Source of the DNA: Neoconidiobolus thromboides FSU 785
Lineage: Eukaryota > Fungi > Entomophthoromycota
Length of the DNA: 64,000 nt
Direction of reading: 5' to 3'
NCBI GenBank assembly: GCA_025603075.1
Contig: MU626348.1
Coordinates: 1-64,000, forward strand
Shown: positions 33,623 through 53,940 of the stretch, piece after piece
How positions within the stretch are numbered: position 1 is the stretch's first letter
How the letters are laid out: the number at the start of each line of letters is the position of its first letter
Notes under the pieces: model-generated
What the model saw: only the letters and a program-made list of their open reading frames with translations
Database searches by the model: none
Told to the model about the DNA's origin: nothing
Program-made: the position numbers and the translations under genes

Positions 33623-34267
33623 TTAAACAATCAATTTTTTCCTGTCAACGGTACTATAATATGCAACTAAATTAGTGAATAAAGAGGGATAGATGACCCA
33701 GGCAAGAGCAAGATTATGTAGAGAGAACCCTAATTCTAAACCAAAAAAGATATTGATTGTAAAGAGGCCAAGGATAGCATAGCCTGCTGTACGATGAATT
33801 CTAAAAATTTTAGTCAATGGTACCGAAAAATTAGATATTAATTTATAATGGTAAAGAGTAGCAACTAAACCAGCGGATAAAAATAGTATTAATATAGTTA
33901 AACCTAAGATGGCATGTGGGGATTGAAAGTGTGCTTCTCCCCAACTTGATTTTTGAGTATAAATAACAATAAATGAAGTGATGAAACTTAATCCAGCTAA
34001 CGTTTGAAATACTTGATGTAAACGCTTGGATTTTAAACTGGATTCAACTTTAAGCACTAATATAGCTTGACTTGTAAAATAAAAACATAATATCATTAAT
34101 GCAGGGTGTAAGTTAAAGGTATTATATCCATCTTTCCAAATTAAGTATTGAATAGAAGCTAATAAGATAGCTAAATTAATTTGAATGAAATAATAGGCTT
34201 TGCTTAACTTTAAACTATTTTGAGTAGCTTGTGTATTTAATAAGTTGCTTTCTTCGTTAACACTCAT
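33623..34267 (-). CDS. Cytochrome b561-domain protein (CYB561D-like), 214 aa
   Basis: Four spaced heme-ligand His residues: H54 (LHPALM), H84 (LHQVFQ), H118 (SPHAILG), H158 (IHRTAG); multiple TM segments. Confidence 0.88.
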   Translation of the reverse strand: MSVNEESNLLNTQATQNSLKLSKAYYFIQINLAILLASIQYLIWKDGYNTFNLHPALMILCFYFTSQAILVLKVESSLKSKRLHQVFQTLAGLSFITSFIVIYTQKSSWGEAHFQSPHAILGLTILILFLSAGLVATLYHYKLISNFSVPLTKIFRIHRTAGYAILGLFTINIFFGLELGFSLHNLALAWVIYPSLFTNLVAYYSTVDRKKLIV

Positions 34268-37901: not shown

Positions 37902-38447
37902 ATGATACAAGTAACATCTGGTTTATTTTTAGTAGCAAGTCAATATCTCTTATTCACTAAAGGGTTTGTTAACTACTATTACTTAAGCCTCCAACTTTTA
38001 ACTTACTTCTTAATCACTCAAGGTATCCTCGCATTGAAATTTACCCCAAACAAAAAGAAATCCACCCCAACCCATCAACTATTTCAAGTACTATCTATTG
38101 TAAGCTATATTATTAGTAATTATCTCAATGATAAGCCCCTTAACTCCAGCTACCCTGACTACAGTAAAACTATTTTATATAGTATGATTGGAGCTGCTGT
38201 CGCAGCTAACTTAAACATGTATGTCTTATCTACTTTCATGAAAGATACGAAACTTGCTTGGAAAGGACATGGATTCTTTGGTTATTTAGTTTATGTGGCA
38301 GTTTCAATTAATACCATCTTAGGCCTTGAAGCTAATTTTGGTTTGACCCAATCATTTTTAGGTTGGTTTGTTGGTGCCACCTGGGCTGTTTCGTTAGCAC
38401 TTACTGTCAACCCATTTAGTGGGGCAGTAAAAAGTAAGAGTAAATAA
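37902..38447 (+). CDS. Divergent cytochrome b561-like membrane protein (181 aa) with only two His
   Basis: Aligns with 33623-34267 (IQ...QYL, TQGILALK, HQLFQ, HGFFGY, INTILGLE); only H58 and H123 are present. Confidence 0.8.
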   Translation: MIQVTSGLFLVASQYLLFTKGFVNYYYLSLQLLTYFLITQGILALKFTPNKKKSTPTHQLFQVLSIVSYIISNYLNDKPLNSSYPDYSKTILYSMIGAAVAANLNMYVLSTFMKDTKLAWKGHGFFGYLVYVAVSINTILGLEANFGLTQSFLGWFVGATWAVSLALTVNPFSGAVKSKSK

Positions 38448-47715: not shown

Positions 47716-48114
47716 TTATTCCTTAGAAATAGCACCTTGATTGTTATTGAATAAAGAGCCAACGGAAATAGTATGGGAAGGAGAAGCAACAGTACCAGCA
47801 ATTGGGGAGTAAAGTTTGGTATGATGACCCTTGTAACCTGGTAATACGTTGTAACCACCAAAACGTTCAAAGCCACCGTGATAGACGGGTACTACGTTAA
47901 AGGTATTGAAACGGGTAAGTGGAACTTGAGGTAAGTAGTAAAGAGCTCCAGATGGGAAACCACGAACTTCATTGTGTTTTTGGATTTGGAGTTGCCCAAG
48001 ATTGATTTTAGAATCTGGGGAAGCAATCTCAGATTGTTGCTCACCTGAAAAACCGGTGATAGCGTGGGAGCTATAAAGACTGATGAATGATACGGCAGGG
48101 ATAAAGAACTTCAT
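47716..48114 (-). CDS. Small secreted protein (132 aa), family member 2
   Basis: Tandem paralog of 46233-46655; conserved termini, variable Tyr/Gly/Pro centre. Confidence 0.88.
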   Translation of the reverse strand: MKFFIPAVSFISLYSSHAITGFSGEQQSEIASPDSKINLGQLQIQKHNEVRGFPSGALYYLPQVPLTRFNTFNVVPVYHGGFERFGGYNVLPGYKGHHTKLYSPIAGTVASPSHTISVGSLFNNNQGAISKE

Positions 48115-50675: not shown

Positions 50676-52093
50676 ATATTTTATTTATAAAAAATTCATA
50701 ATACTTTTAAAGTATATAATTAATATAAATGGTAAATTTTCAATATCATAGTAAGTGGATATATCAAAATAACTAAATAGTTTTATGACCATAAAAAACA
50801 GTAATTTGTTCTATTTAAGGATAGTTAATAACTATTAAAGCTAGCATCACAAAGCACTTATATTAAACTAACTTATTAAGTATTAAACAATAGACAATAT
50901 AAAACCCCTTTTTAAAAATTAGAGGCTAAAAGCTTATTTAAATAAACATGCATTTAATATAACAAAGTAATGACACTGGTAACATAGAGTTTTAAAAACC
51001 GTTCCTAGGAGGTATTTCTTATCTAGAAGCATCTCCTTAAATATATGTTTTATTAAATAACGCTATTTAATAAGACATATATTTAATGTTTCAAGTTATT
51101 GTCATTTTTAAAGGATCCAATACATTATAATCTTTTTATTATTCATTTTTTTAGTCATTTTGATCTATCAATATTTTAAGATAAAGACATAGTCGTATTA
51201 ATGCCATATCAAAATAGATTATGTAAACATTGGAACGTTTTTAATAACTATAACATGTACTTAAGGATAGAACACTATTTAATAAATTTAGTCATTGATT
51301 AGACAATAATAATGATATATAGATAAAAAAGAAGATAGAGAATCTTCTTAATTAAAGAGTTCATATAATTGGATAAAATAAGATGAAATTTTATCAACTT
51401 TTTAAAACAAAAATCCCTCACTTTTTTTTCTTACTTTTTAGTCGAAGTTACAATTACGCTGTAATTTTGTTAATTGAATTGCTTTATTAAGCAAAAATAA
51501 TTAATTTAAATAAAAAAGGTCATAGCAACATCAATACGAATAAAAGTATTATAAAAATTCATTAAACAGCAATCAAATATAGCTAAACTAGGTTAAGGGT
51601 ATGAGATGTTTATTAATAAGTGCAACTGATACTACTCTATTTATAAATTTGAGTTATTTTTAATATATTTTTAATTTTAAGTTAAATTTCGATTTTTCAA
51701 ATTTTTACAGACTTAAATTGTTTTTACCCCAGTTTGACTACAGTGATTTGATAAGGGTTTAATAAAAAGAAAGGTAGAATTAACGGATAAAAAAGTAGTG
51801 AAATCAAAATCAACCAATTAAATGTACTCTTTTCATGCAATTTATTAACCTAATTTATCTTTTAATGTTCTAAAAAAGCTATATGAAGTAATGATAGGAA
51901 ATGGATTAGTACCCAGAATAAATGAAGGTTAATAGAATAAGAATAAAAGATATAAATAAGCATAGAATTTCAGTTACTTTTGTCATATTTTCTTTGTTTA
52001 TACGAGATAATAACAGTATATATAAATAATAATTTACAAAGCTAGTCTTTTATTTTTTTATTAATTCCATAATTCAAATCAATTGTATCTAAT

Positions 52094-53032
52094 ATGAAAC
52101 TAAATACATCAACTATTTTATTAAGCTCAACTTTACTTTCTTCAGTATTATCCCATTCATGGATGGATTGTATTGGGGATGGAAATCAAAAGTATACTGG
52201 GCCAAATCAATATTTCAGTGATGATTTCCATGAGTTTTGTATAGGTTTTGGACGTGGTTATCCAGGTAGAATGAATAGATGGATCAATGATATATATACT
52301 GTATTAGTTGAAAACCGAGGTGGAGCTAATCCAGCTGATTATAATGTTTGTAAAAAAACCCAAGTCTCTCAAAATTATACTAGTGAATTCCCAATGACTA
52401 AGACAAAGCCAGGTGCTAAACTTAAGATTTGGTATGAATTAGATAATCATTATACCAAAAATCCAACTTATGTATATCTTTGGGGTTATGGCCAACCTGG
52501 TAAAGACATTAGTAAATACTCAGAACAAGTCGAAAGTAACTTAATTATGAAGCATGTATTTGCTTTACCTGATAATCAGAATTGTATGGACATTCATAAT
52601 GCTAATTCCCTTTGTTGGTTCTATTGGACTGTTCCAGAAACTTATACAAATGGCATTTACTCCTTTATTTGGAACTGGAGATGGGATCAAAACCCAACTG
52701 GTGAAGAATATAATACTTGTTTTGATATTGAAATTCAAGGTGGTGATGATAAGAAGCCTGAACAAAGCACTTCCACTTATTCAACTAGTTCTGTAAATGT
52801 CCCAACTTCAGCTTCTTCAACTTCTGAACAAACATCAGCTTCTTCAACTTCTGAACAAACATCAGTTTATTCAACTTCTGAGGAAACTCAAGTTACTACC
52901 CCAACCCCAGTTTATGAAATCCAACCTGAATACCCTATCCAAGAGCATAATTATTTTAAGCCAAAACCAGCTAAACTAGTACAAGGTGGTAGTAAAGAAC
53001 CAACTAAGAAAAAATGCCATCAAAAATATTAA
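52094..53032 (+). CDS. Secreted protein with N-terminal His, putative LPMO-like copper protein, plus a Ser/Thr/Pro-rich tail (312 aa)
   Basis: Signal peptide ending V-L-S followed directly by His21; second His119 (DNHY) and EEYNTCFDIEI (Tyr206); six Cys in the ~200-aa domain. Confidence 0.7.
   Translation: MKLNTSTILLSSTLLSSVLSHSWMDCIGDGNQKYTGPNQYFSDDFHEFCIGFGRGYPGRMNRWINDIYTVLVENRGGANPADYNVCKKTQVSQNYTSEFPMTKTKPGAKLKIWYELDNHYTKNPTYVYLWGYGQPGKDISKYSEQVESNLIMKHVFALPDNQNCMDIHNANSLCWFYWTVPETYTNGIYSFIWNWRWDQNPTGEEYNTCFDIEIQGGDDKKPEQSTSTYSTSSVNVPTSASSTSEQTSASSTSEQTSVYSTSEETQVTTPTPVYEIQPEYPIQEHNYFKPKPAKLVQGGSKEPTKKKCHQKY
52805..52885 (+). repeat. 27-bp coding tandem repeat x3 (TSASSTSEQ)
   Basis: ac(t/a)tcagcttcttcaacttctgaacaa units at 52805 and 52832, and a more diverged unit at 52859. 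Confidence 0.9.
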
Positions 53033-53940
53033 CTAGTTTAAAAAATCGAGCCTTGTATTGTACTCATGATAATTAATAAAAGCTTTTTATTAAAGTACTT
53101 TACTACCAAGTTATTTTTGAATTTCTATTTTTATTTTTATTTTATTTTTTCTATTAAATTTTGTTATCTCAGAAATTTTCTTTATTAAACCCACCCATAA
53201 ATTTTTGTTCCCATTTTATCCATATCAACATGCTTTTGAACGTTTCGAAGTTCCAAATATTTGATTTAACTACTAATTGGAACCACCTCTCCATCCACCA
53301 ATTTCATTTCACCACAATTAACTAATAATAGTAATTTTGAATATGAAAAATAAATTAATTTTTAATTAAATACAATAATATTAAAAACTTAATATTACTT
53401 CTCTTAAGAAGAATAATAGGTACTTAAACTTACTTTAGATATAAAAAATAATAGCTTCTAAATTCCCATTTTCTTATCTGAGTAATAATTTTTAAGCTGG
53501 GCTTTATTTTACCTCAATATCAGCTCCAGACTTAATAACTCAAAAACTTGGCATTATTTTTTATCTTGTGATTTAATTACAGTGGTTGCTTCTATTCATT
53601 AAATTTCACTATCTTATTTTCATTCTACCGCTCAAGCTTACCATCATCATTCAATAGTTATTTCTGTATTAAATAGCTGTCCTTAAAAAGCTTGTTATTT
53701 TCAGTTCCATCGACCAAATATGTTTTTGGACTTTTATATTAATATGATCTAAATGAGATCATTTAAAGCAGTTCAAAGTTATGGCTCTTTTCATTAAATT
53801 AGATCATACTTTAATGTATTATAACTAAATGTATTACAATAAGGCTTGTTGGTTTAATTATTGTTACTGTGTCTTTGAGAAGAAATCAAATTAAAATCTA
53901 TATTATTTTTAAAAATTTTATTACAAATTAGTTTTATAAT

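What the first reader, a model, noticed from the sequence alone, without database searches (positions are those of the whole stretch)
52094..53032. Candidate unclassified LPMO-like copper enzyme (His1...His99...Tyr186 of the mature protein)
The predicted signal peptide ends V-L-S, exposing His as residue 1 (HSWMDC), which is the hallmark of histidine-brace lytic polysaccharide monooxygenases. A second His sits in DNHY after a PG...I.W strand, and the domain ends with W.W.W...EEYNTCFDIEI, like the terminal (E/Q)x(Y/F)xxCxD(I/V)x(I/V) strand carrying the axial aromatic in AA9/AA10/AA11/AA15. The spacing is LPMO-like, but HSWxxC and GxGRGYPGR do not match the N-terminal signatures I know for AA9-AA17 (HG..., HT..., HY...). 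An S/T/P-rich tail suggests wall or substrate tethering. In a probable insect-associated fungus it could attack chitin/cuticle or remodel the fungal wall (inference).
Basis: partly seen in the sequence, partly recalled or inferred. Interest (0 to 1): 0.8.

Follow-up and report, generated by a model that had tools for sequence, protein, structure and literature searches.

The report
Uncharacterised LPMO-fold copper protein (DUF7492)
This is a real, transcribed gene for a secreted protein with the fold and conserved His/His/Tyr residues of copper-dependent polysaccharide-cleaving enzymes (LPMOs), but it belongs to a widespread family (Pfam DUF7492) that I found no study of.

Summary
Window 52094-53032 (+) is an intronless 312-codon gene, and RNA-library contigs cover it.

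- **N-terminal His.** A 20-residue signal peptide ends V-L-S directly before His21. In 105 of 105 complete relatives the residues at -1 and -3 before this His obey the signal-peptidase rule.
- **Family.** The protein passes the Pfam threshold only for DUF7492 (PF24320). 83 of 84 aligned relatives match the same family.
- **Conservation.** The only invariant columns are His1, Trp3, Cys66 and His99 (mature numbering). Tyr186 is kept in 75 of 82 sequences.
- **Structure.** An AlphaFold model (pLDDT 92.9) matches only LPMOs in the top ranks: AA10, AA15, AA13, AA11, AA9 and X325, at Z 9-11.4. Model residue 1 lies on their N-terminal His.
- **Nearest sequence relative.** AA11 is closest, but only over the last ~50 residues (E about 1e-5). 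There E184-x-Y186 aligns with AoAA11 Glu138-x-Tyr140.
- **Family range.** It spans zygomycete fungi, chytrids, Ascomycota and oomycetes. Some members carry CBM1, CBM18 or CBM96 modules or a GH5 domain.

No paper mentions DUF7492. The same stretch was noted once before in this scan, as another reading of the same DNA.

The parts
51962..52093 (+). 5' untranslated part of the transcript (minimum extent)
   Evidence: RNA-library contigs start at 51962 (X1) and 51987 (X2) and run into the ORF without joints.
52094..53032 (+). Complete intronless coding sequence, 312 aa plus stop
   Evidence: ORF list. The public gene model is identical. It aligns end to end with its homologues.
52094..52153 (+). 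Signal peptide (residues 1-20, ending V-L-S)
   Evidence: The hydrophobic core scores 2.17 (Kyte-Doolittle, best 8-residue window). Val is at -3 and Ser at -1. 105 of 105 relatives have A/S/G/T/C at -1 before the conserved His.
52154..52741 (+). LPMO-fold catalytic-type domain (residues 21-216; Pfam DUF7492)
   Evidence: Pfam DUF7492, 39 bits against a cut-off of 27. AF2 model pLDDT 92.9, pTM 0.90. LPMO matches at Z 9-11.4.
52154..52156 (+). Codon of His21, the predicted mature N-terminal His1 (first His of the putative histidine brace)
   Evidence: Invariant in 84 of 84. Structurally aligned with His1 of the AA9/10/11/13/15 structures.
52448..52450 (+). Codon of His119 (mature His99), the putative second histidine of the brace
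   Evidence: Invariant in 84 of 84. It lies in a conserved N/D-G/N-H motif just after strand 89-95 of the model.
52703..52711 (+). Codons of Glu204-Glu205-Tyr206 (mature E184-E185-Y186): putative second-sphere Glu and axial Tyr
   Evidence: Tyr is kept in 75 of 82 sequences. Position 184 is Glu in 45 and Gln in 7. The family-profile alignment places E184 on Glu138 and Y186 on Tyr140 of AoAA11, PDB 4mah.
52742..52987 (+). Low-complexity, Ser/Thr/Pro-rich linker (residues 217-298), including a 27-bp tandem repeat at 52804-52881
   Evidence: Tail composition. Tandem repeat of period 27, 2.9 copies, 94% matches.
52988..53029 (+). Basic C-terminal end GSKEPTKKKCHQKY with a single Cys-His; no hydrophobic GPI-type signal
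   Evidence: A similar basic Cys-containing end is found in C. coronatus (KKKCHRK) and in P0004 (RCRNRRH). Mean hydropathy of the last 20 residues is -1.5.
53033..53081 (+). 3' untranslated part (approximate end of RNA coverage)
   Evidence: Contigs reach 53047 (X2) and 53055 (X10). Depth falls to 0 after bin 53001-53081.

Best explanation
The gene encodes a secreted, transcribed protein of the LPMO structural superfamily. It belongs to the uncharacterised family Pfam DUF7492.

**Shown**
- It is a genuine monoexonic gene with RNA coverage.
- A canonical signal peptide ends directly before a family-invariant His.
- A second His is invariant, and the C-terminal strand carries a conserved E-x-Y-x-x-C motif.
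- There are six conserved Cys.
- The confident predicted fold matches only LPMOs and LPMO-like proteins in the top ranks.

**Inferred**
- After signal-peptide removal, the amino group and side chain of His1, together with His99, bind one copper ion in a histidine brace. Tyr186 sits axially and Glu184 lies in the second sphere, as in AA11.
- The reduced copper uses H2O2 or O2 to oxidise and cut a polysaccharide chain.
- Chitin, from insect cuticle or the fungus's own wall, is the best single guess for the substrate (about 35-40%).
- The Ser/Thr-rich, probably O-glycosylated tail with a basic Cys/His end acts as a spacer or surface-association segment. It is not a GPI anchor.
For: - **Gene and expression:**
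- **Cleavage site:** Val at -3 and Ser at -1 here, and 105 of 105 relatives obey the rule, with a median pre-His length of 20 residues.
- **Family:** DUF7492 at 39 bits against a cut-off of 27. 83 of 84 relatives match it. There are 236 cluster representatives at E<=1e-3.
- **N-terminal motif:** 91 of 151 listed proteins match a strict H-[STAGM]-W-x-x-x pattern, mostly H-[ST]-W-x-[DE]-C. Many of the other 60 start with looser HS..C variants.
- **Conservation:** H1, W3, C66 and H99 are invariant. C6, C29, C144, C154, C189, W173 and W175 are kept in at least 90%. Y186 is kept in 75 of 82.
- **Fold:** AF2 pLDDT 92.9. All 50 Foldseek PDB rows listed are LPMO-family proteins. VIA-align gives Z 9-11.4 with residue 1 on LPMO His1. 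In the Foldseek-independent search of 48,161 chains, the top 23 are all LPMO or LPMO-like, followed by generic Ig-like folds at Z<=7.5.
- **Active-site register:** the family-profile alignment to AoAA11 maps E184-x-Y186 onto Glu138-x-Tyr140. AfAA11A uses His1/His71/Tyr133, and the AA11 second-sphere Glu governs copper reactivity.
- **Carbohydrate context in the family:** CBM96 in three members, CBM1 and CBM18 in one each, and an N-terminal LPMO-like domain fused to GH5 in P0098.
- **Not X325-like:** no BIM1-like Pfam hit in 84 members and no C-terminal hydrophobic GPI signal.
Against: - No experiment bears on copper binding or activity.
- The His1-His99-Tyr186 geometry was not measured, because the tools return no coordinates.
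- Glu184 is only moderately conserved (45 Glu, 7 Gln, 14 Ala, 6 Asp).
- The residue two before the second His is Asn or Asp, not the Ala of AA10 and AA11.
- This protein has no CBM, and the appended modules in relatives point to several different substrates (alginate, cellulose, chitin), so the substrate guess is weak.
- A histidine brace does not guarantee polysaccharide oxidation. X325 proteins have one yet lack that activity (review text), and LaX325 matches the model at Z 9.0.
- The Pfam match covers only profile positions 23-100 of 265.
Confidence: 0.6

Rival explanations
1. It is an LPMO-like copper-binding protein that does not cleave polysaccharides. It would work like X325/Bim1 proteins, capturing or handling copper at the cell surface or remodelling the wall indirectly. 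Alternatively it would act mainly as an oxidase that generates H2O2.
For: - The fold and brace residues are shared with X325 (LaX325 6ibh, Z 9.0).
- X325 shows that a brace does not imply LPMO activity.
- This protein lacks a CBM.
- Asp5 in the H-S-W-x-D-C motif is strongly conserved (Asp in 68 of 84 sequences, Glu in 10) and could be an extra metal ligand.
- The C-terminal Cys-His basic end recalls a report that an LPMO C-terminal disordered region binds copper (bioRxiv 10.1101/2025.11.04.686606, listed).
- RNA coverage comes from what appear to be ordinary culture libraries.
Against: - No BIM1-like (PF20238) match in any of 84 members.
- No GPI signal.
- The axial Tyr and the E/Q-x-Y second-sphere motif typical of active LPMOs are kept.
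- Several relatives carry CBMs or a GH5 domain.
- AA10, AA15, AA13, AA11 and AA9 structures score higher than X325.
Confidence: 0.22
2. It is a very divergent member of an already defined CAZy family (AA11, or AA9), so it is classified after all. The mechanism would be as in the best explanation, and only the family label differs.
For: - The C. coronatus homologues (51% identical) pass the Pfam AA9 threshold, at 32.6 and 33.9 bits against 27.8. UniRef names one of them (P0002) 'AA9 family LPMO'.
- AA11 is the closest solved family by sequence.
- CAZy and dbCAN surveys report AA11 expansions in C. coronatus, E. muscae, Dimargaris and zygomycete secretomes, the same lineages that hold this family.
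Against: - The window protein has no AA9, LPMO_10 or AA14 Pfam hit even at E<=10.
- Only 1 of 84 relatives hits AA9 and 5 of 84 hit LPMO_10 weakly, against 83 of 84 for DUF7492.
- Similarity to AA11 is confined to about 50 C-terminal residues (E=0.16 for the single sequence). The Dimargaris member has no PDB sequence hit at all.
- Structurally, DUF7492-type AlphaFold clusters match at TM 0.65-0.78. Reviewed AA9 proteins match at about 0.45, and no AA11 appears among the top 30 Swiss-Prot hits.
- Z scores to AA9, AA10, AA11, AA13 and AA15 are all about equal.
- The N-terminal motif H-S-W-x-D-C is family-specific.
Confidence: 0.13
3. It is a secreted Ig-like structural or adhesion protein that binds no metal. 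The LPMO resemblance would reflect only a common beta-sandwich fold.
For: - Generic Ig-like folds (RhoGDI, complement and macroglobulin domains) also match the model at Z 6-7.5.
- Some relatives carry PAN and TSP1 adhesion modules.
Against: - The only four invariant columns include exactly the two brace histidines.
- The His always directly follows the signal peptide.
- The top 23 unbiased structural matches are all LPMO or LPMO-like and are anchored at residue 1.
- The Tyr strand has significant sequence similarity to AA11.
Confidence: 0.03

Closest known systems
AA11 LPMOs (AoAA11 4mah/4mai, AfAA11A 7p3u, AfAA11B 9exj/9hdg)
   Same: - It is the closest characterised family by sequence. The family profile matches at E 4e-6 to 1.4e-5, with G-E-x-Y-x-x-C aligned to AoAA11 R-E138-M-Y140-M-N-C143.
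- The fold is the same (Z 9.4-9.9, rmsd 2.8-3.3 Å over 134-143 residues, residue 1 on His1).
- Both are fungal and secreted, and both have a Glu-x-Tyr second-sphere and axial motif.
   Different: - Similarity covers only the last ~50 residues. The single-sequence E-value is 0.16.
- The N-terminus is H-S-W-x-D-C.
- The region between His1 and the second His is about 40 residues longer (98 residues against 59 in AoAA11).
- Asn or Asp replaces Ala two residues before the second His.
- This family has its own Pfam model, DUF7492.
AA10 / AA15 LPMOs (ScLPMO10C 4oy7; Thermobia domestica AA15 5msz)
   Same: They give the highest structural scores (Z 11.4 and 10.8, 150-156 aligned residues, model residue 1 on the N-terminal His). 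Some relatives carry the automatic name 'Chitin-binding type-4 domain'.
   Different: Identity is 13-15%. The window protein has no PF03067 hit even at E<=10, and only 5 of 84 relatives hit it weakly. The axial residue is Tyr; by my recollection chitin-active AA10s typically have Phe there.
AA9 LPMOs (Pfam PF03443)
   Same: The His1/His/Tyr spacing is comparable: 98 and 87 residues here against 85 and 89 in TaAA9A (the latter from memory). The C. coronatus homologues and a few peripheral members pass the AA9 Pfam threshold marginally. Structures match at Z 8.6-10.1 with residue 1 on His1.
   Different: The window protein does not hit PF03443 at all. It has E-x-Y rather than the Q-x-Y of AA9 (the AA9 motif is from memory). 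TM is only about 0.45. It comes from a non-lignocellulolytic, insect-associated lineage.
X325 / Bim1-like copper proteins (LaX325 6ibh; Pfam PF20238)
   Same: Both have the LPMO-like fold (Z 9.0). Both are secreted fungal proteins with an N-terminal His.
   Different: No PF20238 hit in 84 members. No GPI-anchor signal. The domain is larger, 199 residues against about 136 aligned residues in 6ibh. The Tyr and Glu motif is retained, and some relatives carry CBMs.
Pfam DUF7492 (PF24320)
   Same: The protein passes the curated threshold (39 against 27 bits), as do 83 of 84 aligned relatives. AlphaFold clusters named DUF7492 match at TM up to 0.74 by query.
   Different: The Pfam match is partial (profile positions 23-100 of 265), so the entomophthoralean clade is a divergent edge of the family. 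No function is attached to the family and no paper mentions it.

Membership tests
LPMO superfamily (histidine-brace copper monooxygenases, CAZy AA9-11 and AA13-17) | A signal peptide is cleaved so that His becomes residue 1 of the mature protein | tested here: met
   Val at -3 and Ser at -1 before His21. 105 of 105 complete relatives have A/S/G/T/C at -1 and a small or aliphatic residue at -3, with a median leader of 20 aa. This is a prediction; the mature N-terminus has not been sequenced.
LPMO superfamily (histidine-brace copper monooxygenases, CAZy AA9-11 and AA13-17) | A second conserved His completes the brace | tested here: met
   His99 (mature) is invariant in 84 of 84 sequences whose mean column identity is only 22%.
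LPMO superfamily (histidine-brace copper monooxygenases, CAZy AA9-11 and AA13-17) | An axial Tyr or Phe on a C-terminal strand, with a Glu or Gln two residues before it | tested here: met
   Y186 is Tyr in 75 of 82. Position 184 is Glu in 45 and Gln in 7. Both align to AoAA11 Tyr140 and Glu138.
LPMO superfamily (histidine-brace copper monooxygenases, CAZy AA9-11 and AA13-17) | Immunoglobulin-like beta-sandwich LPMO fold | tested here: met
   AF2 pLDDT 92.9, pTM 0.90. Z 9-11.4 to AA10/15/13/11/9. The top 23 of 48,161 chains are all LPMO or LPMO-like.
LPMO superfamily (histidine-brace copper monooxygenases, CAZy AA9-11 and AA13-17) | His1 and the second His close together on a flat, solvent-exposed face (T-shaped copper site) | tested here: inconclusive
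   Only indirect evidence. Model residue 1 is superposed on His1 of all LPMO hits, and the alignments span residues 1-197. The tools return no coordinates, so no distance was measured.
LPMO superfamily (histidine-brace copper monooxygenases, CAZy AA9-11 and AA13-17) | Copper binding and oxidative cleavage of a polysaccharide | not testable with these tools
   Needs protein biochemistry.
Pfam DUF7492 (PF24320) | Whole-protein score above the curated gathering threshold | tested here: met
   39 bits against 27, E 6.8e-10. 83 of 84 relatives match, best E 8e-22. The match is partial for this protein.
AA9 (Pfam PF03443) | Score above the AA9 gathering threshold | tested here: not met
   The window protein has no hit at E<=10. 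Its C. coronatus homologues pass marginally, at 32.6 and 33.9 against 27.8. Only 1 of 84 relatives hits at E<=0.01.
AA11 | Sequence similarity over the whole catalytic domain to characterised AA11s (CAZy/dbCAN family model) | tested here: inconclusive
   The solved AA11s are matched only over about 50 C-terminal residues (profile E about 1e-5, single sequence E=0.16). The dbCAN AA11 model was not available. By the usual dbCAN thresholds, as I recall them (E<1e-15, coverage >0.35), such a match would fail; that is an inference.
AA10 / AA15 (Pfam PF03067 LPMO_10) | Score above the LPMO_10 threshold | tested here: not met
   The window protein has no hit at E<=10. 5 of 84 relatives hit weakly, best E 5e-4.
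X325 / Bim1-like (Pfam PF20238) | A BIM1-like domain match and a C-terminal GPI-anchor signal | tested here: not met
   No PF20238 hit in 84 members at E<=0.01. The C-terminus is basic and hydrophilic, with a mean hydropathy of -1.5 over the last 20 residues.

The most novel reading that the evidence does not exclude
DUF7492 is a genuine, catalytically active LPMO family distinct from AA9-AA17, which would make it a new CAZy AA family. It would be spread across early-diverging fungi, Ascomycota, oomycetes and probably dictyostelids, with its own N-terminal H-S-W-x-D-C signature. Its substrate range would not be covered by the known families. For the entomophthoralean clade that could be the chitin-protein matrix of insect cuticle or the fungus's own wall; for members carrying CBM96 it could be alginate or other algal polymers.
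Probability: 0.45. Interest if true: 0.75.

Novelty: new variant of a known kind. Interest (0 to 1): 0.6.

Why it matters
Each new LPMO family (AA11, AA13, AA14, AA15, AA16, AA17) has widened the known substrates and biological roles of copper-dependent polysaccharide oxidation.

This family is widespread: 236 cluster representatives at 50% identity, in fungi from chytrids to Ascomycota and in oomycetes. It keeps the complete His/His/Tyr(/Glu) set. Some members are fused to CBMs or to a GH5 domain. I found no paper about it.

The window gene is a convenient entry point. It is short, has no intron, is transcribed, and comes from a culturable relative of insect pathogens. A positive activity test would define a new auxiliary-activity family. 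It could also bear on how entomophthoralean fungi breach or remodel chitinous barriers. A negative test with intact copper binding would add a second large class of non-catalytic histidine-brace proteins beside X325.

Tried and rejected
- **Single-sequence AlphaFold** gave an unusable model (pLDDT 35). It was replaced by a run on the 84-sequence alignment.
- **Scan of genome contigs** for relatives found nothing. That collection holds only bacteria and archaea, so the blank says little.
- **Literature.** 'DUF7492' appears in no paper. 'AA18' turned out to be CelOCE, a metagenome-derived cellulose-oxidising enzyme described apart from LPMOs and not relevant here. Searches for new LPMO-like families, for Foldseek-based brace mining and for oomycete or Dictyostelium LPMOs found nothing on this family.
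- **Is the 'AA11' expansion in Dimargaris cristalligena this family?** CAZy counts 15 AA11 genes there. The D. cristalligena member P0023 has no PDB sequence hit and no close paralogues in the word-indexed search. The link is therefore unsupported, but the search has limited sensitivity.
- **Synteny with the C. coronatus homologue.** Only the gene itself matches and the neighbours differ. Orthologue and paralogue cannot be told apart.
- **Functional neighbours.** Topoisomerase I, a small secreted protein, a kelch-type protein and a subtilisin lie nearby. Cytochrome b561 genes lie 14-18 kb away. Nothing links them to this gene, so an operon-like redox-partner idea was dropped.
- **AA17 and AA14 identity.** This was considered because oomycete members exist. 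AA14 (5no7) scores only Z 7.9, no AA17 structure appears among the listed matches, and there are no AA14 Pfam hits.
Full report
**Observation**

It is the only ORF of 150 codons or more between 44.7 and 55.4 kb. Its GC content is 0.30-0.35, against about 0.22 in the flanks. At the window's base composition (26.5% GC) a 312-codon open frame has a chance probability of about 6e-13 (my arithmetic). The public gene model on the source contig (GCA_025603075.1, MU626348.1) is the same 312-aa product.

**Transcription**

Many RNA-labelled public runs hold the sequence. I laid four of them on 51300-53700.
- Contigs cover about 51962-53055 without any joint, so there is no intron.
- Word depth is 8572 in X1 and 904 in X2, against 0-5 on both flanks. 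That contrast is not what genomic DNA would give, so the gene is transcribed as a monoexonic mRNA.
- Two runs whose records say RNA-seq (X10, a fish-gut metatranscriptome, and X15) hold variants about 95-99% identical.
- I do not rank expression from these depths.

**Signal peptide and N-terminal His**

No SignalP was available, so I used the (-3,-1) rule and comparison with relatives.
- The leader MKLNTSTILLSSTLLSSVLS has a hydrophobic core, with Val at -3 and Ser at -1.
- In 105 complete family members, the residue before the conserved His is A, S, G, T or C in all 105.
- The -3 residue is V, A, S, I, T, C, G or L in all 105, and the median leader length is 20 residues.
- A His fixed directly behind the cleavage site across a family this divergent is the LPMO hallmark.

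**Family**

- Pfam gives one hit, DUF7492 (PF24320), at 39 bits against a cut-off of 27. It is partial, covering profile positions 23-100 of 265.
- The two nearest proteins are a Conidiobolus coronatus protein and a near-copy of it (50-51% identity). They instead pass the AA9 model marginally, at 32.6 and 33.9 bits against 27.8, and UniRef names P0002 an 'AA9 family LPMO'.
- An exhaustive HMMER search of 1.84 billion representatives found 236 proteins at E<=1e-3 and 75 at E<=1e-10.
- 91 of the 151 listed proteins match a strict H-[STAGM]-W-x-x-x pattern behind a leader, mostly as H-[ST]-W-x-[DE]-C. Many of the rest start with looser HS..C variants or are N-terminally truncated gene models.
- In an alignment of 84 mature domains (mean column identity 22%) the only invariant columns are His1, Trp3, Cys66 and His99.
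- Six Cys, Trp173, Trp175, Gly87, Pro161 and Gly167 are kept in at least 90%. Tyr186 is Tyr in 75 of 82 sequences. Position 184 is Glu in 45 and Gln in 7.
- 83 of the 84 match DUF7492, 5 match LPMO_10 weakly and 1 matches AA9. None matches the BIM1-like or AA14 models.

**Structure**

- The single-sequence prediction failed (pLDDT 35). With the 84-sequence alignment the model reached pLDDT 92.9 and pTM 0.90.
- All 50 Foldseek rows listed against the PDB are LPMO-family proteins: AA10, AA9, AA16 and entomopoxvirus fusolin.
- VIA-align gives Z 9-11.4 to AA10, AA15, AA13, AA9 and AA11 structures. In every case model residue 1 lies on the N-terminal His of the chain, for example 4oy7 residue 35, 5msz residue 1 and 4mah residue 1.
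- Reviewed AA9 models likewise align from query residue 1 to their first mature residue.
- The Foldseek-independent search of 48,161 chains puts 23 LPMO or LPMO-like chains first (AA10, AA15, AA13, AA11, AA9, X325 at Z 9.0, AA14 at 7.9, AA16 at 7.7). Generic Ig-like folds follow from Z 7.5 downward.
- AlphaFold cluster representatives named DUF7492, 'Chitin-binding type-4 domain' or left unnamed match much better, at TM 0.65-0.78. The family is thus a structural group of its own, roughly equidistant from the characterised LPMO families.
- I could not measure the His1-His99 distance because no coordinates are returned. This is the main gap in the structural argument.

**Relation to known families**

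By sequence the nearest solved proteins are AA11 LPMOs (7p3u, 4mah, 9exj; profile E 4e-6 to 1.4e-5). The match covers only the last ~50 residues. There G-E184-x-Y186-x-x-C189 aligns with R-E138-M-Y140-M-N-C143 of AoAA11. The AfAA11A paper describes His1/His71/Tyr133 with Ala69 on the other axial side. The AfAA11B paper describes the second-sphere Glu as a determinant of copper reactivity. This family differs from AA11 in several ways:
- It has the H-S-W-x-D-C start.
- The stretch between the two His residues is about 40 residues longer than in AoAA11.
- It has Asn or Asp instead of Ala two residues before the second His.

The window protein itself hits 4mah only at E=0.16, and the Dimargaris member hits nothing in the PDB. 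CAZy-based surveys report AA11 expansions in C. coronatus, E. muscae, Dimargaris and zygomycete secretomes. Pfam-based work reports LPMO_10 enrichment in Zoopagomycota. Those may well be other genes: a C. coronatus 'Chitin-binding type-4' cluster matches this model only at TM 0.44, and P0023 has no close paralogues in the word-indexed search. I could not run dbCAN, so whether CAZy pipelines label this protein AA11 stays open.

**Distribution and descent**

Named members come from:
- Entomophthoromycotina: Entomophthora muscae and Conidiobolus coronatus. Two of the four E. muscae copies have adjacent locus tags.
- Kickxellomycotina: Ramicandelaber, Spiromyces, Coemansia and Dimargaris.
- Mortierellomycota: Haplosporangium and Entomortierella.
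- The chytrid Rhizophlyctis.
- Ascomycota: Venturia and Microthyrium.
- The oomycetes Pythium insidiosum and Lagenidium giganteum, and the stramenopile alga Phaeothamnion.

In a maximum-likelihood tree the window protein sits in a clade with the C. coronatus and E. muscae proteins and two unnamed sequences (support 100/98). That clade is sister to a Kickxellomycotina clade and next to a Mortierellomycota clade. This pattern fits vertical descent.

**Function**

Everything about function is inference. A secreted protein with a His1/His99 brace, an axial Tyr and a second-sphere Glu on an LPMO fold most likely binds one copper ion. It would then oxidise a glycan with H2O2 or O2.

Carbohydrate involvement in the family is supported by appended modules. 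CBM96 occurs in three members, and the founding CBM96 is alginate-specific (PMC9971899). CBM1 and CBM18 occur in one member each. P0098 has an N-terminal LPMO-like domain fused to GH5. Fusions to TGT and PPR domains place the LPMO-like domain internally and look like merged gene models.

The window protein has no CBM. Chitin is the best single guess, given AA11 as the nearest family, the CBM18 member and the host lineage, but it is a weak one.

The tail is a Ser/Thr-rich low-complexity linker with a 27-bp repeat in 2.9 copies. It ends in a basic Cys/His segment, KKKCHQKY, which recurs as KKKCHRK in C. coronatus and RCRNRRH in P0004. There is no hydrophobic GPI signal. C-terminal disordered extensions occur across LPMO families (PMC8615602, listed).

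**Novelty**

The kind of protein (LPMO) is known, and the family is catalogued as a DUF. Automatic names already hint at LPMO for some members. I found no paper on the family and no solved structure of a member. I class it as a new variant of a known kind.

Noticed in passing
window 52804-52881: A 27-bp tandem repeat (2.9 copies, 94% matches) encodes the repeated peptide (T)SASSTSEQ in the linker. RNA contig depth rises several-fold over it, probably because short repeat contigs pile up there.
   Followed up: partly
window 52988-53029: The basic C-terminal end with a single Cys-His (KKKCHQKY) recurs in C. coronatus (KKKCHRK) and in an unnamed relative (RCRNRRH). Short-tailed family members lack it. 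It may be a metal-binding or wall-association motif.
   Followed up: partly
window 33623-34267 (-) and 37902-38447 (+): There is one clear cytochrome b561 gene (Pfam E 6e-12) and one weak one (E 0.006, below the cut-off), 14-18 kb upstream. They are separated from the LPMO-like gene by a GNAT acetyltransferase and topoisomerase I. I found no evidence of a functional link.
   Followed up: partly
window 47716-48114 (-): A 132-aa ORF begins with a signal-peptide-like stretch and has no Pfam match. It is the nearest upstream gene model.
   Followed up: no
window 52094-53032, runs X1-X20: Near-identical copies (up to 85% of sampled words) turn up in RNA-type runs filed under at least eight different organism labels, including a fish-gut metatranscriptome. 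This fungus or close strains appear in many unrelated samples.
   Followed up: no
relatives P0005, P0153-P0155 (Entomophthora muscae): Four copies at least 90% identical exist in E. muscae. Two have adjacent locus tags (DSO57_1003890 and DSO57_1003891) on one contig, which suggests recent tandem duplication.
   Followed up: no
relative P0098 (578 aa): It has a signal peptide, an N-terminal HSWLHC LPMO-like domain (residues 12-207) and then a full GH5 cellulase domain (251-494). It would be a natural LPMO-like plus glycoside-hydrolase fusion if the gene model is right.
   Followed up: partly
L001 (C. coronatus KQ964502.1) against the window: The C. coronatus homologue shares no neighbouring genes with the window locus. 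Only the gene itself matches by blastn and tblastx.
   Followed up: yes
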